Of a stretch of DNA of 64,000 bases, positions 1,415 to 40,620 are shown in pieces. The DNA comes from Diplonema japonicum (Eukaryota > Protista > Euglenozoa: Diplonemea): the NCBI GenBank assembly GCA_964019335.1, contig OZ025715.1, positions 310,001 to 374,000 of the forward strand, given 5' to 3'. Position numbers and translations under genes: made by a program. A model generated the notes under the pieces. That model did no database searches, was not told the DNA's origin, and worked only from the letters and a program-made list of their open reading frames with translations. Numbering within the stretch: the first letter of the stretch is position 1; the number at the start of each line of letters is the position of its first letter.

Positions 1415-1453
1415 GACCAATGATTCTAAAGCTACAGTTTCTGTACTTTATTG
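1415..1453 (+). other. Genomic copy of the 39-nt euglenozoan (diplonemid-type) spliced-leader exon
   Basis: GACCAATGATTCTAAAGCTACAGTTTCTGTACTTTATTG is 39 nt and ends in the conserved kinetoplastid/diplonemid SL 3' half CAGTTTCTGTACTTTATTG. Confidence 0.9.
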
Positions 1454-1714
1454 GTCGTTCGTGTTCTGCAGGTGCCTGCCACCACTGCCGCTGCGTCCGT
1501 CGTCGCCGGAGGAAATAATGAGGCCCTCAGTGAGTGAAAAAGAAAAAAGAGAAATCGATACCATAGCGAAGTGGGTGAAGACCTGTGAAGAGCCGCACCA
1601 GGTGAGAAGGCCTGGTCTGAGATGGTAGAGAAGTAGGAGTGTACTGAGGGAGGAGGTCAGCCCGTCTTTGGACCTATTTTAGCATAATAAAAGCAGTCCA
1701 TGTCACGAAATTCA

Positions 1715-1925
1715 TGTGGAGTCGACACATGCCCTCACAGAAGAGCCTTTTATGCACATCTTACTTGAGCAGACGCCAGACAATCCTTGAAGCACTAATG
1801 TGATCTAAACTAGCTTGCCAGAACAGTGCATCTCCTTTAAAATGGAATAGAATAGCGGAAGTATGTGGACGTTCCAAGGTAGCTGATCCGACGTTATTGG
1901 GATTTTATCTATTGTTTACAACAAA

Positions 1926-1958
<33 letters not shown>

Positions 1959-2952: not shown

Positions 2953-3207
2953 GACACCGGTTCATCAGGCATCATGGTACGGCCGCTTCGAGACAGTTGT
3001 CATCTTGTTGAAACTTGCGGTAGCGACGCAGGTGTCATCTAGCATCACAGGGCGCCCACGTCGAAACTCTCGGTCAAGACTGCGGTGTCAAAAGCAACGA
3101 CGGTTGGCCACCGGTTTATCGAGCATCACGGTACGGCCGCTTCAAGACAGTTAGATATCTTATTGAAAGGAGAGGTGCGGCATCACGCACTCTTTCCGTT
3201 TCATACA

Positions 3208-3253
<46 letters not shown>

Positions 3254-3352
3254 TGTTGAAACTCTTGGTTAAGACGCAGGTGTCAAAAGCAACGACGGTT
3301 GGACACCGGTTCATCTAGCAGCACAGGGCGGCCAGCTGGAGACAGTTACCTA
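2953..3352 (+). pseudogene. Decayed ankyrin-repeat array
   Basis: TPVHQASWYGRFETV, ASRYGRFKTVRYLIE and DAGVKSNDGWTPVHLAAQGGQLETVTY match the ankyrin consensus; stops and deletions present. Confidence 0.8.
3169..3251 (+). mobile_element. Short poly(A)-tailed retro-insertion (family A) in an ankyrin repeat
   Basis: GGAGAGGTGCGGCATCACGCACTCTTTCCGTTTCATACAC(A)n flanked by CTTATTGAAA (3159-3168) and CTTGTTGAAA (3252-3261). Confidence 0.85.
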
Positions 3353-31990: not shown

Positions 31991-32300
31991 CAGTGAGCAC
32001 CACCGCACACCGAAACTTATCAGGTTTTTAGTTTTCTCTCTTTTTAAACAACGTTTTTGTTCATTCTTTTTTTTATAAGGGAGTACCAAGACAACAGGGC
32101 AAGCTTTCTGTACCTCCAACCCACCAAGTGGGAGCGACCCAGCAAGTCGAAAAAGATTCCCCTTTCTGAGTTCCAACCCCTCAGGAAATGAACGCTTTTT
32201 CTTGGGTATAATACACCATTAATATTGTTCGTCGGTTTCCATGGAACCACCATAACCCACAGCACAACACAGCACACTTCACCACCTGCACAATAACATG
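31991..32300 (+). repeat. About 310-bp upstream leader, inverted copy at 37626-37952
   Basis: Reverse-complement match that ends exactly at ...CACAATAAC-ATG in both copies; extra match 31825-31870 with 37969-38013. Confidence 0.9.
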
Positions 32301-34526
32301 GATATGGATCCGTCGGTGAAGCTTCAAAAGTACGAGCAAGGGAAGTGCCTCGGGTCCGGTGGACAGGGGTCAGTGTACAAGACGGTGAGGAGGGTGGATG
32401 GAGGTATCTTTGCGATGAAGGTGTTGGAGGCTCCTGCAGAAAAGCACAAAAGGAACGTGATGGAAGTACAGCACATGCTGAAGCTGAGCCACAAGAACCT
32501 GATTCCCTGCCTTGACTACTTCGAGACGACAAAGCAAGTGTCAGAGGAACCCCCTGAGAAGGTGTGGCAGGTTCACATCGTGATGCCCCTGTATGCAAAA
32601 GGGGACCTCCACTCACACATCCTCAAGGAGGGACCCCTCTCTCAGGAGAGGGCGGAAAGGCTCTTGCGGGAGATGGGTGAGGTCCTTCACTACATTCACA
32701 GTGAGGGCTTCATCCACAGGGACGTGAAACCCCTGAACATCATGGTGTCGGGGAAGGTGGGGACCACACCCCTTTCTGCGTCTGGTGTTGGCGGGGAGGC
32801 AGAGTTCATCCTTGCAGACTTGGGACTGTCGAAGGAGGTGTCCTCTGATGGGGCAGCAAGTACTCTTGTGGGCACGCCAGTCTTCATGGCACCCGACATT
32901 AGGGACGACAAGTACACCAACAAAGTGGACATGTGGGCCCTCGGGGTGACTGTGTGTCACGTGGTTCTCCAAAAAGGCCTGAGGGACCTCTTTCTGAAAT
33001 ACCTGCACGAGAACCGGGAGCTTGTGATGGGAAAGCTTCGGACTCACCTCCCCCATGCCCTCGGGGCACCGCTTTGTGAGGTTGTGCTCCGCCTCCTCTC
33101 CACTGACCCTTTGGAACGCCCCAGTGCCTCTGAGATGCTGCAGACGGGACTGACTGGAATAGTTATGGTTCTTCTTGCGATTGGGAGTGTTGGCGGAGAT
33201 GAGAGGAAAAGGAAGCTCTTCGTGGCGGTTGGAGCAGGAGCTGAAGAGGTTCGGGTGGCGGCAGCAAAGGCCTTCTCTTCTGGGGGGCAGGAGCTCCTCA
33301 GGGTTCGCAGGTTGGAGGTGTTCGACAAGGACTTCGGGGAGTTCGTGGAGGAGGACGACGAAAAGATTGTGTTCGAGGACAAGGGACAGGTCCGTGTCGT
33401 GTTTGAAGAACCACTCCCAACCACCACTTCTTCAACCATCAGTGACAGCAGGGATGCACCGCCTTGCGAAAGCAGCAGTACCGTCTTGTCCATTATAGAT
33501 GACGAAGGTGAGACGCCGCTTCATAAAGCAGCAGGCAACGGACAACTCTATGGCAAGGACAAAGGCATTATTCATTGGGAAGGCGACAGGAGGGCCAACA
33601 GGCAGCAGAACCGAGCCCCCGGAGGTCCAAGGTACGAGATCGGCAGCTCTGTCCGAGCTCTCGTGAGGCTCGAGGGTGACAGCAACCAGGTGGTGAAGTT
33701 GGGTGCCATCGGGAAGGTGACCGCTCTGCCCGGAGCCAACAGCACTGTCGAGCACGGTGCTGTTGCGGAGGTTATCATCAACGGCGTGCGTTTCGACGCC
33801 CAGCCTGACATGATCGCACCCGCCGACAGGCCCGCCCCCAACACCAGGGACCAGCCCCGAAGAGACCAGGGTGGCCGTCCGGACCCCGCTGGCAAGGAGG
33901 AGCGCTGCAAGGATCCCACGGACCCCAGGGGTCCAAGGTACGAGATCGGCAGCTCTGTCCGAGCTCTCGTGAGGCTCGAGGGTGACAGCAACCAGGTGGT
34001 GAAGATGGGTGCCATCGGGAAGGTGACCGCTCTGCCCGGAGCCAGCAGCACTGTCGAGCACGGTGCTGTTGCGGAGGTTATCATCAACGGCGTGCGTTTC
34101 GACGCCCAGCCGGACATGATCGCACCCGCCGACAGGCCCGTCCCCAACACCAGGGACCAGCCCCGAAGAGACCAGGGTGGCCGTCCGGACCCCGCTGGCA
34201 AGGAAGAGCGCCGCAAGGACCCCACGGACCCCAGGGGTCCAAGGTACGAGATCGGCAGCTCTGTCCGAGCTCTCGTGAGGCTCGAGGGTGACAGCAACCA
34301 GGTGGTGAAGTTGGGTGCCATCGGGAAGGTGACCGCTCTGCCCGGAGCCAACAGCACTGTCGAGCACGGTGCTGTTGCGGAGGTTATCATCAACGGCGTG
34401 CGTTTCGACGCCCAGCCGGACATGATCGCACCCGCCGACAGGCCCGCCCCCAACACCAGGGACCAGCCCAATAACTGCGATGAGACACCACTTCAGCAGC
34501 ACGTTACGGACACCTCGCGACAGTAA
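32298..34526 (+). CDS. Ser/Thr (NEK-like) kinase fused to an ankyrin fragment and 3 tandem 102-aa repeats; possibly a pseudogene
   Basis: GSGGQG, AMK, HRDVKPLN, DLG, GTPVFMAP and DMWALG; ETPLHKAAGNGQL; ankyrin units continue out of frame after the stop. Confidence 0.8.
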   Translation: MDMDPSVKLQKYEQGKCLGSGGQGSVYKTVRRVDGGIFAMKVLEAPAEKHKRNVMEVQHMLKLSHKNLIPCLDYFETTKQVSEEPPEKVWQVHIVMPLYAKGDLHSHILKEGPLSQERAERLLREMGEVLHYIHSEGFIHRDVKPLNIMVSGKVGTTPLSASGVGGEAEFILADLGLSKEVSSDGAASTLVGTPVFMAPDIRDDKYTNKVDMWALGVTVCHVVLQKGLRDLFLKYLHENRELVMGKLRTHLPHALGAPLCEVVLRLLSTDPLERPSASEMLQTGLTGIVMVLLAIGSVGGDERKRKLFVAVGAGAEEVRVAAAKAFSSGGQELLRVRRLEVFDKDFGEFVEEDDEKIVFEDKGQVRVVFEEPLPTTTSSTISDSRDAPPCESSSTVLSIIDDEGETPLHKAAGNGQLYGKDKGIIHWEGDRRANRQQNRAPGGPRYEIGSSVRALVRLEGDSNQVVKLGAIGKVTALPGANSTVEHGAVAEVIINGVRFDAQPDMIAPADRPAPNTRDQPRRDQGGRPDPAGKEERCKDPTDPRGPRYEIGSSVRALVRLEGDSNQVVKMGAIGKVTALPGASSTVEHGAVAEVIINGVRFDAQPDMIAPADRPVPNTRDQPRRDQGGRPDPAGKEERRKDPTDPRGPRYEIGSSVRALVRLEGDSNQVVKLGAIGKVTALPGANSTVEHGAVAEVIINGVRFDAQPDMIAPADRPAPNTRDQPNNCDETPLQQHVTDTSRQ
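33624..34469 (+). repeat. 306-bp tandem repeat x about 2.8
   Basis: ggtccaaggtacgagatc at 33624, 33930 and 34236. Confidence 0.95.
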
Positions 34527-34655
34527 AATATCTCATCGAAACTCACGGGCAAGACCCTGGTGTCAAAGACGACAAGGGTGAGACACCACTTCATAAGGCA
34601 ACATATAGCAGACAACTCGAGACAGTAAAATTTCTCGTCGAAACTTGCGGGCAAA
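34470..34655 (+). pseudogene. Decayed ankyrin repeats carrying two empty target sites
   Basis: gacagtaaaatatCTCATCGAAACtcacgggc and gacagtaaaatttCTCGTCGAAACttgcgggc are uninterrupted. Confidence 0.8.
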
Positions 34656-37080: not shown

Positions 37081-37232
37081 ATGACACCAGTTCATCTTGA
37101 AGCTGGGAACGGACACCTTAAGACGGTTAAATATCTCGTCGAAACTCGCCGGCAAAAATGTTGTGTCAAAGACAACGGCGGTCGAACACCTGTGGTTCTA
37201 GCAGCTGAGAACAATCCTCGAGACTGTTACAT
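37081..37232 (+). pseudogene. Ankyrin-repeat fragment with an empty target site
   Basis: TPVHLEAGNGHLKTVKYLVET...KDNGGRTPV; aaatatCTCGTCGAAACtcg is uninterrupted. Confidence 0.8.
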
Positions 37233-38459
37233 ACATGTCGGGACAGGGCATTCGCGCTGCTTCTTAGTCCGCGAGCAGACCAAACTGACGAAAAGAATAA
37301 AGCCCCCATAACGCGATTAAAAGAAGATAAAGGATACTGCGGCGTAGCCATAAAAGAAATTCCTTGTGACTCCCCAGTTCAAAAACGTGTTTATTTCCGA
37401 CAGACCTGGTATGGTGTTGCGATGCGTCCTCCTGAGGAGCCTCGTTGGGATTCTTCACAGCTTTATGTCCGGAGGTCACTGTTATATGTGCGGGCAGAGT
37501 ATGGGTGTCCTGTGGGTATTGTGATATCCCGTATATGGGCGGAAATACGGGTGGCTGTTCAGAGCCGCTTGTGACTTGCTAGGGCCACCTTATTGCTGCC
37601 GTTGGGAGAAGTGACCCCAGTTATTCATGTTATTGTGCAGGTGGTGAACTGTGCTGTGTTGTGCTGTGGGTTATGGTGGTTCCATGGAAACCGACGAACA
37701 ATATTAATGGTGTATTATACCCAATAAAAAGCGTTCATTTCCCTGAGGGGTTGGAACTCAGAAAGGGGGGATCTTTTTCGACTTGCTTACTAGGTCGCTC
37801 CCACTTGGTGGGTTGGAGGTGTCTCGAGACACAGAAAGCTTGCCCAGTTGTCTTGGTACTCCTACTATAAAAAAAAGAATGAACAAAAACGTTGTTTAAA
37901 AAGAGAGAAAACTAAAAACCTGATAAGTTTCGGTGTGCGGTGGTGCTCACTGAGAGAGAAAAACGTGGTATCCCCTGTTTCAGGGCAGCTCTCGCTGACG
38001 CACACCCACAGAGGGGATGTGGTCACCCCTTACATCTCGTGGCAAGGTGCCTCGAGTGGTATTTTGGGAAGCCTAAGGCATTTTTCCCCTTGCGACCACG
38101 CAAGGTTCAATCCCTGGAATCTTTCCAAAATTGCCGTTGTTTTGAAAGAAGAAGAGAAAAAAAAGAGAGATGGAGTCTCTTCAACCTATCTTTTGATCGA
38201 ACGTTTCTGTGGTGTGGCCTTCGGCCCCTCGCTCATCCTCCTCGGTACCTTAGGTATAAAACCCTCAACCGAGTTGGTAAGGACACAATAGTTGTACAGT
38301 TGCCTTTCAAGGATGTGGCGGGTTGCCGGGGAGGCGAATACCGGTCTAGAGAGTAGCCCCTACGTGCGTAGGGAGTGGACAGAAAAAATAGCAATTCTTC
38401 GTGTCCTGAACCGGGTTTTAAAGATGTGAAGTGTACAAAAAAAAAAAAAAAAAAAGAGA

Positions 38460-38690
38460 CTATTTAAGGGTGCCTGCAGTATGTGGCAGGGCGCCCTGCA
38501 CAAGTATCGTCTACTTGATTACAGGGGGCGCGCCTCGGCCTAGTTGTAGCTTCTTCTGCGTTCCGCGTCGTGTCCTTAATGCGTGCGGTGTGCAACTCAA
38601 CCCCAGCCATGGTGCCCCTGGTAACCAAGATTCTGAGCCCGTGCAGTTTGCTGCCTGTTCGTCACTAAGCATCTGCGATACGTTCTTCCA
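38460..38690 (-). mobile_element. Inverted copy of the 8277-8560 repeat family
   Basis: Reverse-complement match; its terminus ggcg.cctgccaca.ac.gcagg.a.ccttaaa also occurs at 25981-26013. Confidence 0.75.
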
Positions 38691-38710
38691 GTTAAATATC
38701 TCGTCGAAAC

Positions 38711-38767
38711 AGGAGAGGTGCGGCATCACGCACTCTTTCCGTCTCATACACAAAAAAAAAAAAAAAA
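38711..38767 (+). mobile_element. Family A poly(A) retro-insertion in an ankyrin repeat
   Basis: Perfect 11-bp TSD CTCGTCGAAAC at 38700-38710 and 38768-38778. Confidence 0.92.
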
Positions 38768-38879
38768 CTCGTCGAAACTCACGGGCAAGACCCTGGTGTC
38801 AAAGATAACTACGGTCAGACGCCGCTTCATGAAGCAGCATGCACCGGACAACTCGAGACAGTTAAATATCTCATCGAAA

Positions 38880-38970
38880 AGTATGGGTTTTCTCCCCCCC
38901 CTTTTTTTTTAAAAAAAATTCCAATCAGCCAGGAGAGGTGCGGCATCACGCACTCTTTCCGTCTCATACA

Positions 38971-39002
<32 letters not shown>
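38880..39002 (+). mobile_element. Family A poly(A) retro-insertion (longer 5' end) in the next ankyrin repeat
   Basis: TSD CTCATCGAAA (38870-38879) and CTAATCGAAA (39003-39012). Confidence 0.85.
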
Positions 39003-39004
<2 letters not shown>

Positions 39005-39115
39005 AATCGAAACTCACGGGCAAGAACCTGGTGTCGTGGACGACACCGGTGAGACACCGCTTCATGAAGCAGCAAACTACGGACATCTCTAGACAGTTAA
39101 ATATCTTGTCGAAAC

Positions 39116-39276
39116 CACTAGAGAGCGAACCCTACGGGTGGCGGTGCGTGTTACGCATTCGTTACCTCGAAGGGGGTATAATGATTCTTGAGAAGAAAGC
39201 ACCTAATGGGCGGAGCTCTGGTAAAGCTTTGTAAGTGCAACCACTTCGATGGATGAATACTTCTGGAGCAAACATC

Positions 39277-39321
<45 letters not shown>
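39116..39321 (+). mobile_element. Family B poly(A) retro-insertion in a third consecutive ankyrin repeat
   Basis: Perfect 11-bp TSD CTTGTCGAAAC at 39105-39115 and 39322-39332; body unrelated to family A. Confidence 0.92.
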
Positions 39322-39323
<2 letters not shown>

Positions 39324-40420
39324 TGTCGAAACTCGCGGGCAAGACCTGATGTCAAAGACGACAGCGGTGACGCGTTTAGTCTTGGAGAATCCGAGACGTG
39401 CTCCACATAGGATGGGGATGGGGGGGAAGCAATCGACCTCGAAGCGCCTATCGCACAAAAGAGATCCCAGCGAACGATGCGACGAATGGGGTGTGTACGT
39501 CCAGGACATGTTCCAAAGACTGGAGAGCGAGAGTGCGCATATGTACGTGCTGAGGCTGACTGAAATGCATTTGGGTGAAACCGGAGCACGCATGCTGTAT
39601 CTGCATTTGCTGGAGAATCCTCTGCTCAACCCGGCAGACGTGGGAGGCCCTTCTTCGGAAGGTGCCAGTCGCTTGATCAGTGTCGTCGAATGCGCGCTAT
39701 ATTTTATAATTATGTGTCAACAAGGGTGACGAACAGGAAAATAACCCCCCCCTCGACCTTCATACTCCTCCCGAACTAACGCGATCAGTGCGTTCACGTC
39801 CGCCCCCGTGTGTGGTTCACCATCCTTGATGTCCAGGTGGAGGAGGAGGGGCTCCTCTGAGTATCCGACCAGCCCAGAAATGTTTAGCACTGGTGGCGTC
39901 TGTGCTTAACGGCAACAGGGTCTTTTCGATGCTTTGCTTCACTCTTCTCGAGCACTTGTCTCCTTCTCGAATCCGGGCCCCTTTGCCAGCAGCGTGTCTG
40001 GTGTCGGTATCTTCATGCGCGAGCTCCACCAATGGGATGCGTGTTTGCTGCTTGGTGGTTGGTGGTGCCTGCGACCAAACACGACATCGCCCACCCGTCT
40101 ATGAACTCCTGCCCCACCACGGGGCAAAGCACTGCCTGTTGAGGTCCTTCGAAGATTTTGACACTCAGGCATCTGGCTTTCCCTGTTGAAGTTTCAGCCA
40201 AAAGAAATTCTCGCGAGAGTGTGCGAGAATGCGAGTCGTTTTGCGAGAATTTCGGCTCAGACTTTTTTTGTGCGAGAATGCGAGTCGGTTCACCACTATG
40301 CCTAGGGGGTCATAAGGGGGTCGTTTTTTTGCCATTTTTCAGTTTCTTCGCCAAGGGCATTTTGGGCCCTTAAAAAAACTCTAACCACCCCAAAAGTGCC
40401 CACAAACCACCCAAACCCCC

Positions 40421-40620
40421 NNNNNNNNNNNNNNNNNNNNNNNNNNNNNNNNNNNNNNNNNNNNNNNNNNNNNNNNNNNNNNNNNNNNNNNNNNNNNNNN
40501 NNNNNNNNNNNNNNNNNNNNNNNNNNNNNNNNNNNNNNNNNNNNNNNNNNNNNNNNNNNNNNNNNNNNNNNNNNNNNNNNNNNNNNNNNNNNNNNNNNNN
40601 NNNNNNNNNNNNNNNNNNNN
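40421..40620. other. Assembly gap (200 N)
   Basis: Run of N. Confidence 1.

What the first reader, a model, noticed from the sequence alone, without database searches (positions are those of the whole stretch)
38690..39340. Ankyrin-repeat-targeted retroposition: two unrelated poly(A) elements insert at the same base of ankyrin-coding DNA
Seen: three consecutive ankyrin units here, plus one at 3159-3261, each carry a poly(A)-tailed insert at the identical position, after (GAGAC)AGTTA(A/G)ATAT, duplicating the next 10-11 bp (codons L-V/I-E-T). The TSDs co-vary with the local unit (CTCGTCGAAAC twice; CTC/AATCGAAA; CTTGTCGAAAC twice; CTTA/GTTGAAA). That argues for independent insertions into already diverged repeats, not copying of one event. 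Three inserts share the 3' end AGGAGAGGTGCGGCATCACGCACTCTTTCCGTYTCATACAC(A)n; the fourth (39116-39321) is unrelated. Uninterrupted empty sites occur at about 3004, 34533, 34634 and 37134. Known: poly(A) plus TSD marks target-primed reverse transcription, and euglenozoan site-specific retroposons target SL-RNA genes (SLACS/CZAR/CRE) or a hot spot in RHS genes (ingi/L1Tc). Inference: a site-specific endonuclease/RT uses a multicopy protein-repeat motif as its safe harbour, and may remodel or inactivate ankyrin genes.
Basis: partly seen in the sequence, partly recalled or inferred. Interest (0 to 1): 0.92.

Follow-up and report, generated by a model that had tools for sequence, protein, structure and literature searches.

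The report
LINE retrotransposon that targets ankyrin-repeat codons
A young, transcribed LINE-type jumping gene in a diplonemid protist (probably Diplonema japonicum) inserts almost only at one exact base of the DNA that encodes an ankyrin protein repeat, a kind of "safe harbour" not described before for such elements.

Summary
All four window inserts sit after AGTTA(A/G)ATAT, carry poly(A) tails of 16-43 nt and are flanked by 10-11-bp duplications of CTYRTYGAAA(C).

Three inserts are 3' ends of one LINE, "family A". I found its 7.4-kb full-length copy. It has an ORF1, a 2A-like peptide, an APE-fold endonuclease, a reverse transcriptase and a Cys/His-rich tail.

- **Site use.** The 21 genomic copies trace to 13 independent events, and 12 of these lie at the ankyrin site. 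At least 262 sites remain empty.
- **Independence.** Insert cores are 97% identical while the flanking ankyrin units are about 72% identical. The duplications co-vary with the local unit in 13 of 17 events (3.6 expected). These are separate hits, not copies of one event.
- **Fourth insert.** It is a truncated copy of a 545-bp non-autonomous element, "family B". Three of its four copies lie at the same base.
- **New here.** Seven family A events are cut at the base of a 3' hairpin. One insert stays in frame in eight paralogues. The full-length copy starts with spliced-leader relics.

The host genes form a protein kinase-ankyrin family. This is a new variant of site-specific LINEs. Two other first-stage notes flagged it elsewhere in this genome.

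The parts
38690..38710 (+). Unit 1 target: head AGTTAAATAT (38690-38699) and 5' copy of the target-site duplication CTCGTCGAAAC (38700-38710)
38711..38767 (+). Family A mini-insert: A + GGAGAGG...CATACAC (3' hairpin 38712-38740) + A16
38768..38778 (+). 3' copy of the duplication CTCGTCGAAAC, identical to the 5' copy
38860..38879 (+). Unit 2 target head AGTTAAATAT and 5' duplication CTCATCGAAA
38880..38928 (+). 49-nt low-complexity filler at the 5' junction, not part of family A and of unknown origin (extra 5' sequence or template switch)
38929..39002 (+). Family A 3' end (CCA + hairpin + tail region) + A31
39003..39013 (+). 3' duplication CTAATCGAAAC (one mismatch to the 5' copy)
39095..39115 (+). 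Unit 3 target head AGTTAAATAT and 5' duplication CTTGTCGAAAC
39116..39321 (+). Family B: last 163 nt of a 545-bp non-autonomous poly(A) element + A43
   Evidence: junction seen in independent runs
39322..39332 (+). 3' duplication CTTGTCGAAAC, identical to the 5' copy
3149..3168 (+). Target head AGTTAGATAT and 5' duplication CTTATTGAAA in a separate decayed ankyrin array
3169..3251 (+). Family A mini-insert (40 nt, starting exactly at the hairpin base) + A43
3252..3262 (+). 3' duplication CTTGTTGAAAC
34522..34543 (+). Empty (uninterrupted) target site
34624..34645 (+). Empty target site
37125..37146 (+). Empty target site
2990..3014 (+). Degenerate empty site GAGACAGTTGTCATCTTGTTGAAAC
32298..34526 (+). 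Member of the host gene family: N-terminal protein kinase domain. Other members carry long arrays of 102-bp ankyrin units.

Best explanation
A low-copy, recently active, transcribed non-LTR retrotransposon ("family A", 7.4 kb) integrates by target-primed reverse transcription at one phosphodiester bond of ankyrin-coding DNA.

**Element.** It has an ORF1. Its ORF2 region runs: N-terminal 2A-like peptide, APE-fold endonuclease, reverse transcriptase, Cys/His-rich C-terminus. It ends in a poly(A) tail.

**Target.** The host is a protein kinase-ankyrin gene family of a diplonemid, probably Diplonema japonicum.

**Steps**
1. The element's protein nicks the antisense strand opposite ...AGTTAAATAT^CTYRTYGAAAC... 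(codons ...V-K-Y^L-V/I-E-T...).
2. It primes cDNA synthesis on the poly(A) tail of the bound RNA.
3. It nicks the sense strand 10-11 bp downstream. This gives the CTYRTYGAAA(C) duplication and a fixed sense orientation.

**Shown:** the element and its domains, the precise junctions, the independence of the events, the near-exclusive use of the site, and transcription.

**Inferred**
- Specificity lies in the element's protein: the endonuclease and/or the Cys/His-rich tail.
- The multicopy repeat serves as an expendable safe harbour.
- The 545-bp family B element and two tiny "family C" inserts are mobilised in trans by the same machinery.
- The frequent 39-43-nt inserts arise because reverse transcription or RNA survival ends at the base of a stable 3' hairpin that the protein probably binds.
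- The template is a spliced-leader trans-spliced mRNA, so sense insertion into a transcribed gene could supply expression.
For: **Element**
- RVT_1 E = 4e-20. Exo_endo_phos scores 27.9 bits, above the 24.5 cut-off.
- The endonuclease model has pLDDT 85 and matches L1 endonuclease, ExoIII and NExo at E about 1e-13. Catalytic D, N, D and H are invariant in the alignment.
- The reverse transcriptase is closest to human L1 ORF2p (2e-18) and further from R2 (3e-8).
- The 2A motif LLLAGDVERNPGP lies just before the endonuclease.
- The full-length copy has target junctions at both ends.

**Specificity**
- 21 copies of the 3' end, 20 of them at the site.
- All 25 forward poly(A)+target junctions lie in ankyrin units. 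The 2 reverse-strand matches are at control level.
- At least 262 empty sites.
- Other LINE families in my loci (37% reverse transcriptase identity or less) are not followed by the target.

**Independence**
- Insert identity 97% against flank identity 72%.
- Duplication haplotypes match in 13 of 17 events, against 3.6 expected, P < 1e-5.
- 5' truncations differ: 7.4 kb, 4.3 kb, 4.1 kb, about 190 nt, 44+49 nt, and 39-43 nt.

**Youth and expression**
- Three long copies differ at about 10 substitutions in 4.1 kb.
- Transcripts in the D. japonicum EukProt set are 99-100% identical.

**Hairpin**
- dG -17.8 kcal/mol, z = -5.2. It starts at the recurrent truncation point.

**Family B**
- Two full-length copies with the same 5' end and one truncated copy lie at the same base, each with its own duplication.
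Against: - No assembled copy has one uninterrupted endonuclease-reverse transcriptase frame. In one copy the two frames overlap by 62 nt; the others carry further 1-bp indels. The active source may therefore be unassembled, or translation may be unusual.
- Families B and C share no 3' sequence or hairpin with family A. Trans-mobilisation by family A is an inference. One family B copy and one family A copy lie outside ankyrin DNA.
- No empty/filled polymorphism and no reads across the poly(A) tails could be obtained.
- Only one genome was examined.
- One junction (C60:40264) was not seen.
Confidence: 0.9

Rival explanations
1. One ancestral insertion per family was spread by duplication or gene conversion of ankyrin units. 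The shared position would then reflect common descent, not targeting.
For: This did happen for one event. The insert with the tail GCAAAAAAAGAAAA occurs eight times on contig C60 with 96% identical flanks. One long copy is also duplicated (L010 and L012).
Against: - Across the other events, inserts are 97% identical while flanks are 46-87% identical.
- The duplications differ between events but match within them.
- Insert lengths run from 40 nt to 7.4 kb and tails from 11 to about 60 nt.
- Three unrelated sequences use the same base.
Confidence: 0.02
2. The element is not site-specific. It inserts widely, and only insertions in expendable ankyrin arrays survive selection.
For: Insertions cluster in arrays that already look dead, with adjacent units hit. 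One off-target family A copy exists.
Against: - Selection cannot give nucleotide-exact junctions and one orientation in 17 of 17 reconstructed on-target events.
- The genome is full of other dispensable DNA that holds other LINE families but not family A.
Confidence: 0.03
3. Families B and C are not moved by family A. A second autonomous LINE with the same target, unassembled or extinct, moves them, or several LINE lineages share this specificity.
For: - Family B's 3' end is unrelated to family A's and lacks the hairpin.
- One family B copy sits at another recurrent site, TTCTTTAAGGGTGC.
Against: - Only one reverse transcriptase family was found at the site.
- Families A, B and C have the same nick position and the same duplication length.
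- No long copy carries family B's 3' end.
Confidence: 0.3
4. The inserts are assembly or sequencing artefacts in repetitive ankyrin arrays.
For: Long homopolymers and tandem 102-bp units are hard to assemble. Public contigs break at the poly(A) tracts.
Against: - Junction-spanning contigs occur in runs from separate studies.
- The same architecture recurs at 25 places on 6 contigs (C31, C60, C68, C72, C105, C116), always with matching duplications.
Confidence: 0.01

Closest known systems
ingi/RIME (Trypanosoma brucei) and L1Tc/NARTc (T. cruzi) with the RHS 'retrotransposon hot spot' genes
   Same: These are euglenozoan APE-type LINEs with a short non-autonomous partner. They have a hot spot inside the coding region of a multigene protein family, which yields pseudogenes split by retroelements (PMC7563717). 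An N-terminal 2A-like peptide is known for L1Tc (my own knowledge) and is present here.
   Different: - The target here is a motif repeated many times within each gene (an ankyrin unit), not one site per gene.
- Site use is near-exclusive (12 of 13 events), whereas ingi and L1Tc show relative specificity with many dispersed copies.
- The duplication is 10-11 bp, against 12 bp for ingi/L1Tc (my own knowledge).
- Clade membership was not tested, and no trypanosomatid protein appeared among the hits.
R1, TRAS/SART and Tx1-clade LINEs (APE-type, sequence-specific)
   Same: These are APE endonuclease LINEs that insert at one position of a multicopy target in one orientation. TRAS and SART have poly(A) tails and target short tandem repeats. 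SART1 uses a 3' UTR stem-loop for template recognition (my own knowledge). The list of known targets is in PMC4640811.
   Different: Known targets are rRNA, snRNA, tRNA and 5S genes, spliced-leader exons, transposons, microsatellites and telomeric repeats. None is a protein-coding repeat motif. The host lineage here is a diplonemid. Relationship to these clades was not tested.
SLACS / CZAR / CRE (spliced-leader gene-specific LINEs of kinetoplastids)
   Same: Euglenozoan site-specific non-LTR elements that use a multicopy gene as a harbour.
   Different: They encode a restriction-like endonuclease. This element has an APE fold and a poly(A) tail, and its target is protein-coding.
Human L1 with Alu and processed pseudogenes
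   Same: A poly(A)-tailed APE LINE with frequent 5' truncation, 5' chimeras or filler, and probable trans-mobilisation of unrelated polyadenylated RNAs. Its reverse transcriptase is the closest solved one.
   Different: The L1 endonuclease recognises only a loose TTTT/AA motif. Here a conserved stretch of at least about 21 bp is used almost exclusively.

Membership tests
Non-LTR (LINE) retrotransposon, APE type | Reverse transcriptase domain of the LINE type | tested here: met
   Pfam RVT_1 E = 4e-20. Best solved match is L1 ORF2p at 2e-18.
Non-LTR (LINE) retrotransposon, APE type | N-terminal apurinic/apyrimidinic-like (EEP fold) endonuclease with catalytic residues | tested here: met
   Exo_endo_phos 27.9 bits against a 24.5 cut-off. 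Model pLDDT 85; Foldseek matches L1 endonuclease, ExoIII and NExo at E about 1e-13. D160, N162, D211 and H236 are invariant.
Non-LTR (LINE) retrotransposon, APE type | Hallmarks of target-primed reverse transcription: 3' poly(A), target-site duplication, variable 5' truncation, no LTRs | tested here: met
Non-LTR (LINE) retrotransposon, APE type | Intact coding capacity (autonomy) in at least one copy | tested here: inconclusive
   The reverse transcriptase frame is open for 1135-1154 aa in four copies. The endonuclease and reverse transcriptase are not in one uninterrupted frame in any assembled copy.
Sequence-specific (target-specific) LINE | Most independent copies at the same nucleotide of the same target, in the same orientation | tested here: met
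   12 of 13 family A events, with 25 of 25 forward junctions in ankyrin units.
Sequence-specific (target-specific) LINE | Element-encoded protein cleaves the target at the observed bonds | not testable with these tools
   Needs biochemistry.
ingi clade (ingi/L1Tc) | Reverse transcriptase phylogeny places the element in the clade | not tested
   No reference set was available. The nearest hits are unnamed diplonemid LINEs at about 35% identity.
ingi clade (ingi/L1Tc) | 2A-like peptide at the N-terminus of the endonuclease | tested here: met
   DVERNPGP. A relative, P0012, also starts with it. The motif also occurs in other clades, so it does not decide membership.
ingi clade (ingi/L1Tc) | 12-bp target-site duplication | tested here: not met
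   The duplication is 10-11 bp, with a range of 5-11.
SINE (for family B) | Head derived from tRNA, 5S or 7SL RNA with a pol III promoter | tested here: not met
   No Rfam match at E <= 1.
SINE (for family B) | 3' tail shared with the partner LINE | tested here: not met
   No similarity to family A. Family B is better called a non-autonomous poly(A) retroposon.

The most novel reading that the evidence does not exclude
The element and its host family may have moved beyond parasite and safe harbour.

- Hairpin-sized mini-insertions (39-43 nt plus tail) are produced systematically.
- They can be kept as in-frame coding insertions. One gives a 21-aa insert, SRRGAASRTLSVSCKKRK-LVE, in eight paralogues.
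- They might also be removed as short A-rich introns. D. japonicum introns have a median length of 41 nt and an unusual A-rich tract before the 3' splice site (PMC12621601).

If so, a site-specific LINE would be a generator of repeat-protein variation, and perhaps of introns. Its expression would be supplied by host polycistronic transcription plus spliced-leader trans-splicing, which would explain the strict sense orientation.
Probability: 0.15. Interest if true: 0.9.

Novelty: new variant of a known kind. Interest (0 to 1): 0.72.

Why it matters
- **New target class.** Sequence-specific LINEs are known to use RNA genes, spliced-leader exons, other transposons, microsatellites and telomeres as harbours (PMC4640811). 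A protein-coding repeat motif is a new class. It shows that any sufficiently multicopy, individually expendable sequence can be colonised.
- **Natural system.** It offers a compact example of how an APE-type LINE reads a target of at least about 21 bp. This is of interest for programmable, R2-like insertion tools.
- **Diplonemid genomes.** It shows a concrete route by which retroelements truncate, extend or pseudogenise members of a large signalling-protein family, in a group that is abundant in the ocean and little studied.
- **Retroposition mechanics.** The hairpin-bounded mini-inserts and the spliced-leader relic at the 5' end give testable handles on template recognition and on how a promoter-less element is expressed in a polycistronic, trans-splicing genome.

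Tried and rejected
- **More genome sequence.** Later genome searches gave coordinates only, and no matched letters. The junction at C60:40264, the copies at C107 and the sequences that follow the dispersed spliced leaders could therefore not be read.
- **The look-up of encoding contigs.** The D. papillatum protein P0044, which fuses a reverse transcriptase to ankyrin repeats, could not be placed on DNA. Its junction lies at a different position in the repeat, so I draw nothing from it.
- **Metagenome scan with the reverse transcriptase.** No relatives found.
- **Protein atlas.** No usable hit.
- **Protein search with an ankyrin array.** It was swamped by generic ankyrin proteins. Restricting it to the insert-encoded peptide found nothing, so there is no evidence that the in-frame insert is expressed.
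- **Rfam.** No hit on family B, on the 5' UTR of family A or on the window region. No SINE head and no HDV-like ribozyme were found.
- **Pfam.** No hit on ORF1 or on the Cys/His-rich tail. There was only a sub-threshold zf-RVT match.
- **Public runs.** Only short contigs were available, and they break at the poly(A) tracts. They give no start, end, strand or allele information.
- **Family C source.** None was found in the genome.
- **Splicing idea.** I checked by eye whether mini-inserts could be spliced out in frame (5 of 7 would be). I did not build or search any joined sequence, so this remains speculation.
Full report
**1. Observation**

Three consecutive ankyrin units at 38690-39332, and a fourth at 3149-3262, are each interrupted right after AGTTA(A/G)ATAT. 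Each insert ends in a pure poly(A) run of 16, 31, 43 or 43 nt. Each is flanked by a 10-11-bp direct repeat of the next target bases, CTYRTYGAAA(C).

- Three inserts share GGAGAGGTGCGGCATCACGCACTCTTTCCGTYTCATACAC (3 matches, none in 100 shuffles).
- The fourth, at 39116-39278, is unrelated.
- Uninterrupted sites lie at 34522, 34624 and 37125, with a degenerate one at 2990-3014.
- The window has 74 A/T runs of 12 nt or more. Only the ankyrin inserts show convincing exact duplications; the rest are at control level.
- Contigs from public runs of other studies span the filled 5' junction of the third insert.

**2. Genome-wide picture**

The window is C68:310001-374000 of a 62.5-Mb, 132-contig assembly.

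- A 23-mer from the shared 3' end occurs 21 times, and 20 of these are followed by poly(A) and CTYRTYGAAAC inside ankyrin units.
- A junction pattern of ten A's plus the target duplication occurs 25 times on the coding strand of ankyrin units. It occurs twice on the other strand, which is control level.
- A 22-mer spanning the intact site occurs at least 262 times with up to 2 mismatches, against 0 in controls. Most lie in arrays of 102-bp period on about ten contigs.
- Roughly one site in ten is therefore filled.

**3. The parent element (family A)**

Walking 5' from the long copies gave one full-length copy, L022 2169-about 9560 (7.39 kb), with the target on both sides: AACTAAATAT-CTTGTTGAAAC|...(A)n|CTTGTTGAAAC. 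It holds, in order:

- a 5' UTR;
- open frames without a Pfam match (ORF1 region, Cys-rich at its end);
- an ORF2 region that starts MADVKQ...LLLAGDVERNPGP, a 2A-like peptide;
- an endonuclease domain;
- a 1117-1154-aa reverse transcriptase frame;
- a Cys/His-rich C-terminus of about 110 aa without a Pfam family.

The endonuclease passes Pfam's cut-off (27.9 against 24.5 bits). Modelled with 14 relatives, it reaches pLDDT 85 and pTM 0.82. It matches L1 endonuclease, ExoIII and NExo at E about 1e-13, with the catalytic D, N, D and H invariant. The reverse transcriptase matches RVT_1 at 4e-20. Among solved structures it is closest to human L1 ORF2p (2e-18), well ahead of R2 (3e-8). It is thus an APE-type LINE, not a restriction-like-endonuclease one.

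Only four reverse transcriptase-bearing copies exist, two of them a segmental duplicate. All other LINE families in the genome are 37% identical or less. In my loci those families are not followed by the ankyrin target.

The closest outside relatives are unnamed LINEs of Diplonema papillatum at about 35% identity. Transcripts in the EukProt set of Diplonema japonicum are 99-100% identical. I therefore take the organism to be D. japonicum or a very close relative, and the element to be transcribed. One transcript carries the 9-bp (MRK) variant seen in the C60 copy.

No assembled copy has the endonuclease and reverse transcriptase in one uninterrupted frame.
- In the 4.3-kb copy the two frames overlap by 62 nt.
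- The full-length copy and the C60 copy carry further 1-bp indels.

I describe this only.

**4. Independent insertions, not copies of one event**

The 21 copies reduce to 13 events.
- One event (3' variant TTTCATGC, tail AAAAAAAGAAAA) was copied eight times on C60 along with its flanks, which are 96% identical. One long copy was duplicated.
- Among events, the 39-nt insert core is 97% identical on average. The 102-bp ankyrin unit downstream is 72% identical on average (range 46-87% between different events).
- I reconstructed 17 pre-integration sites (12 family A, 3 family B, 2 family C). The three variable positions of the duplication agree between the 5' and 3' copies in 13 of them. Shuffling gives 3.6, and 0 of 100,000 shuffles reach 13.
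- Insert lengths are 7.39 kb, 4.3 kb, 4.1 kb, about 190 nt, 44 nt plus a 49-nt filler, and seven of 39-43 nt.
- The three long copies differ at about 10 substitutions in 4.1 kb, so activity is recent.

One family A event lies off-target, inside another LINE, with a 7-bp duplication GTTAAAG.

**5. Geometry of integration**

The 3' junction is invariant: (A)n then CTYRTYGAAAC. One event starts at the next base. The first nick is therefore on the antisense strand, opposite the T^C step of ATAT^CTYG.

The 5' junction falls after GAAA or GAAAC, less often earlier. The resulting duplications are 10-11 bp, with 8, 8 and 5 bp in three events.

All events share TTA(A/G)ATAT upstream. One of them, unit 1 of this window, has non-ankyrin DNA further upstream. 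That DNA is an abundant repeat cut at 38689/90. Its time of arrival relative to the insertion is unknown.

There is no complementarity between the primer end and the RNA 3' end.

**6. The recurrent mini-insert and the hairpin**

Seven of the 12 on-target family A events begin 0-3 nt upstream of GGAGAGG. That point is the 5' base of an 11-bp hairpin, GGAGAGGUGCG-GCAUCA-CGCAC-UCUUUCC. Its dG is -17.8 kcal/mol and z is -5.2; none of 200 shuffles folds as well.

Random 5' truncation over 7.4 kb cannot give this. I infer that the hairpin is the protein's RNA handle, and that either cDNA synthesis or the RNA itself often ends at its base. A C-rich CCCTACA-type tract lies just upstream. All copies are near-identical, so there is no covariation test.

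**7. Other passengers at the same bond**

*Family B.* It is a 545-bp element with a defined 5' end (GGTGGCAGCAGG...). Two independent full-length copies exist on C116 and C72, the latter with a 50-bp internal gap. The 163-nt copy in the window is the third, and each has its own duplication at the ankyrin site. A fourth copy sits elsewhere, flanked by TTCTTTAAG. Family B has no Rfam match, no similarity to family A and no comparable hairpin.

*Family C.* Two tiny inserts ending in ...TCATTCCCGG(A)n occupy the same bond on C31 and C105. No source copy was found.

I infer trans-mobilisation by the family A machinery. A second, unseen LINE with the same specificity remains possible.

**8. Host genes and consequences**

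The target units belong to genes with an N-terminal protein kinase domain (Pkinase E = 8e-46 for window 32298-34526). These genes carry long arrays reading ...NDGxTPxHxAAxNGHLETVKYL(V/I)ETRG....

- Most inserts end the frame. For example...KYLIETGEVRHHALFPSHTQKKKKKKTY stops there.
- Hits cluster in adjacent units of arrays that look dead.
- The eight-copy event is different. Insert plus duplication is 63 nt (72 in one copy) and is read through without a stop...LETVKYLVE-SRRGAASRTLSVSCKKRK-LVETRGQ.... It lies inside open frames of up to 600 aa. At least one insertion has therefore been kept as coding sequence. I found no matching protein in the public collection.

**9. The 5' end and the spliced leader**

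The full-length copy begins AAACTGTACTTTGTACTGTACTTTACTGTACTGTACTTTATTG|G. These are stacked partial copies of the 3' end of the spliced leader.

- The genome holds about 290 dispersed copies of ...ACGATTCTAAAGCTACAGTTTCTGTACTTTATTG. One of them is a clean stacked relic.
- The next 45 nt or so of the family A 5' UTR resemble the sequence that follows a complete leader in a 15-copy family.
- This fits a template that was a trans-spliced, polyadenylated mRNA. It suggests that sense insertion into a transcribed gene, followed by trans-splicing, supplies expression. This is inference.
- Whether those 45 nt are a shared UTR or derive from the SL RNA itself could not be settled, because genome letters had run out.

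**10. Comparison with what is known**

[quoted passage not shown] APE-type specific families are reported from the R1 and Tx1 clades (PMC4640811).

Three full-text searches that combined ankyrin with LINE or target-specificity terms found no such element. The D. papillatum genome paper does not mention one.

The nearest precedent for a protein-coding target is the RHS hot spot for ingi/RIME in trypanosomes (PMC7563717). This element works like those systems, but I do not file it in the ingi, R1 or Tx1 clade. Phylogeny was not tested, and the duplication length differs from that of ingi.

**11. Verdict**

The observation and the interpretation both hold. This is a new variant of a known kind: a site-specific APE LINE with a new class of target.

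Added points of interest are hairpin-bounded mini-inserts, a non-autonomous passenger, an in-frame retained insert and spliced-leader relics.

Two other first-stage notes (s1-867019, s1-864468) flagged the same phenomenon on other pieces of this genome. My genome-wide counts agree with them.

Noticed in passing
window 1416-1957: A unit of about 540 bp that starts with a complete spliced leader (GACCAATGATTCTAAAGCTACAGTTTCTGTACTTTATTG) and ends in A31. It looks like a processed retrocopy of a trans-spliced mRNA.
   Followed up: partly
genome-wide; e.g. G000:C8:849397-849447: About 290 dispersed copies of the spliced-leader 3' half lie on nearly all contigs. One is a stacked relic (...TTTCTGTACTTTATTG-TTTCTGTACTTTATTG-G), as in the recycled mRNAs of dinoflagellates. 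It is not settled whether the copies are leader RNA genes or relics.
   Followed up: partly
window 38456-38689: A very abundant repeat, with contig depth up to about 1e6 against a few hundred nearby. It is antisense to the region downstream of the reverse transcriptase in another LINE locus (L037). It is cut at 38689/90, where it abuts AGTTAAATAT. Other copies continue ...TTCTTCCA-CTCGGGCGCTACCGGT.
   Followed up: partly
window 38340-38475; L037; L058 1668-1700: A poly(A) tail is followed by GAGACTATTTAAGGGTGC (or GATTCTTTAAGGGTGC) in three places, one of which is the off-target family B copy. This may be a second recurrent insertion site.
   Followed up: partly
C31, C60, C68, C72, C105 arrays (L022, L023, L018, L060; window 38690-39332): On-target insertions are strongly clustered. 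Adjacent or nearby ankyrin units are hit in six arrays, while at least 262 sites stay empty. This could mean accumulation in dead arrays or local re-integration.
   Followed up: no
L005-L009, L011, L013, L021 around position 1480-1545: A family A mini-insert with a shortened tail is read through in frame as a 21-aa (24-aa in L021) insertion in eight paralogous kinase-ankyrin genes.
   Followed up: yes
P0044 (Diplonema papillatum protein): A gene model that fuses a LINE reverse transcriptase to two ankyrin repeats. The junction is at a different place in the repeat. The DNA could not be fetched.
   Followed up: partly
window-wide: There are 74 homopolymer A/T runs of 12 nt or more in 64 kb, and most lack duplications. 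The D. japonicum intron paper reports a median intron of 41 nt and an A-rich tract before the 3' splice site (PMC12621601). A possible link to retroposition was not tested.
   Followed up: no
window 40400-40620 approx.: The window holds a run of 200 N (a gap or withheld stretch), seen as X in the ORF translations.
   Followed up: no
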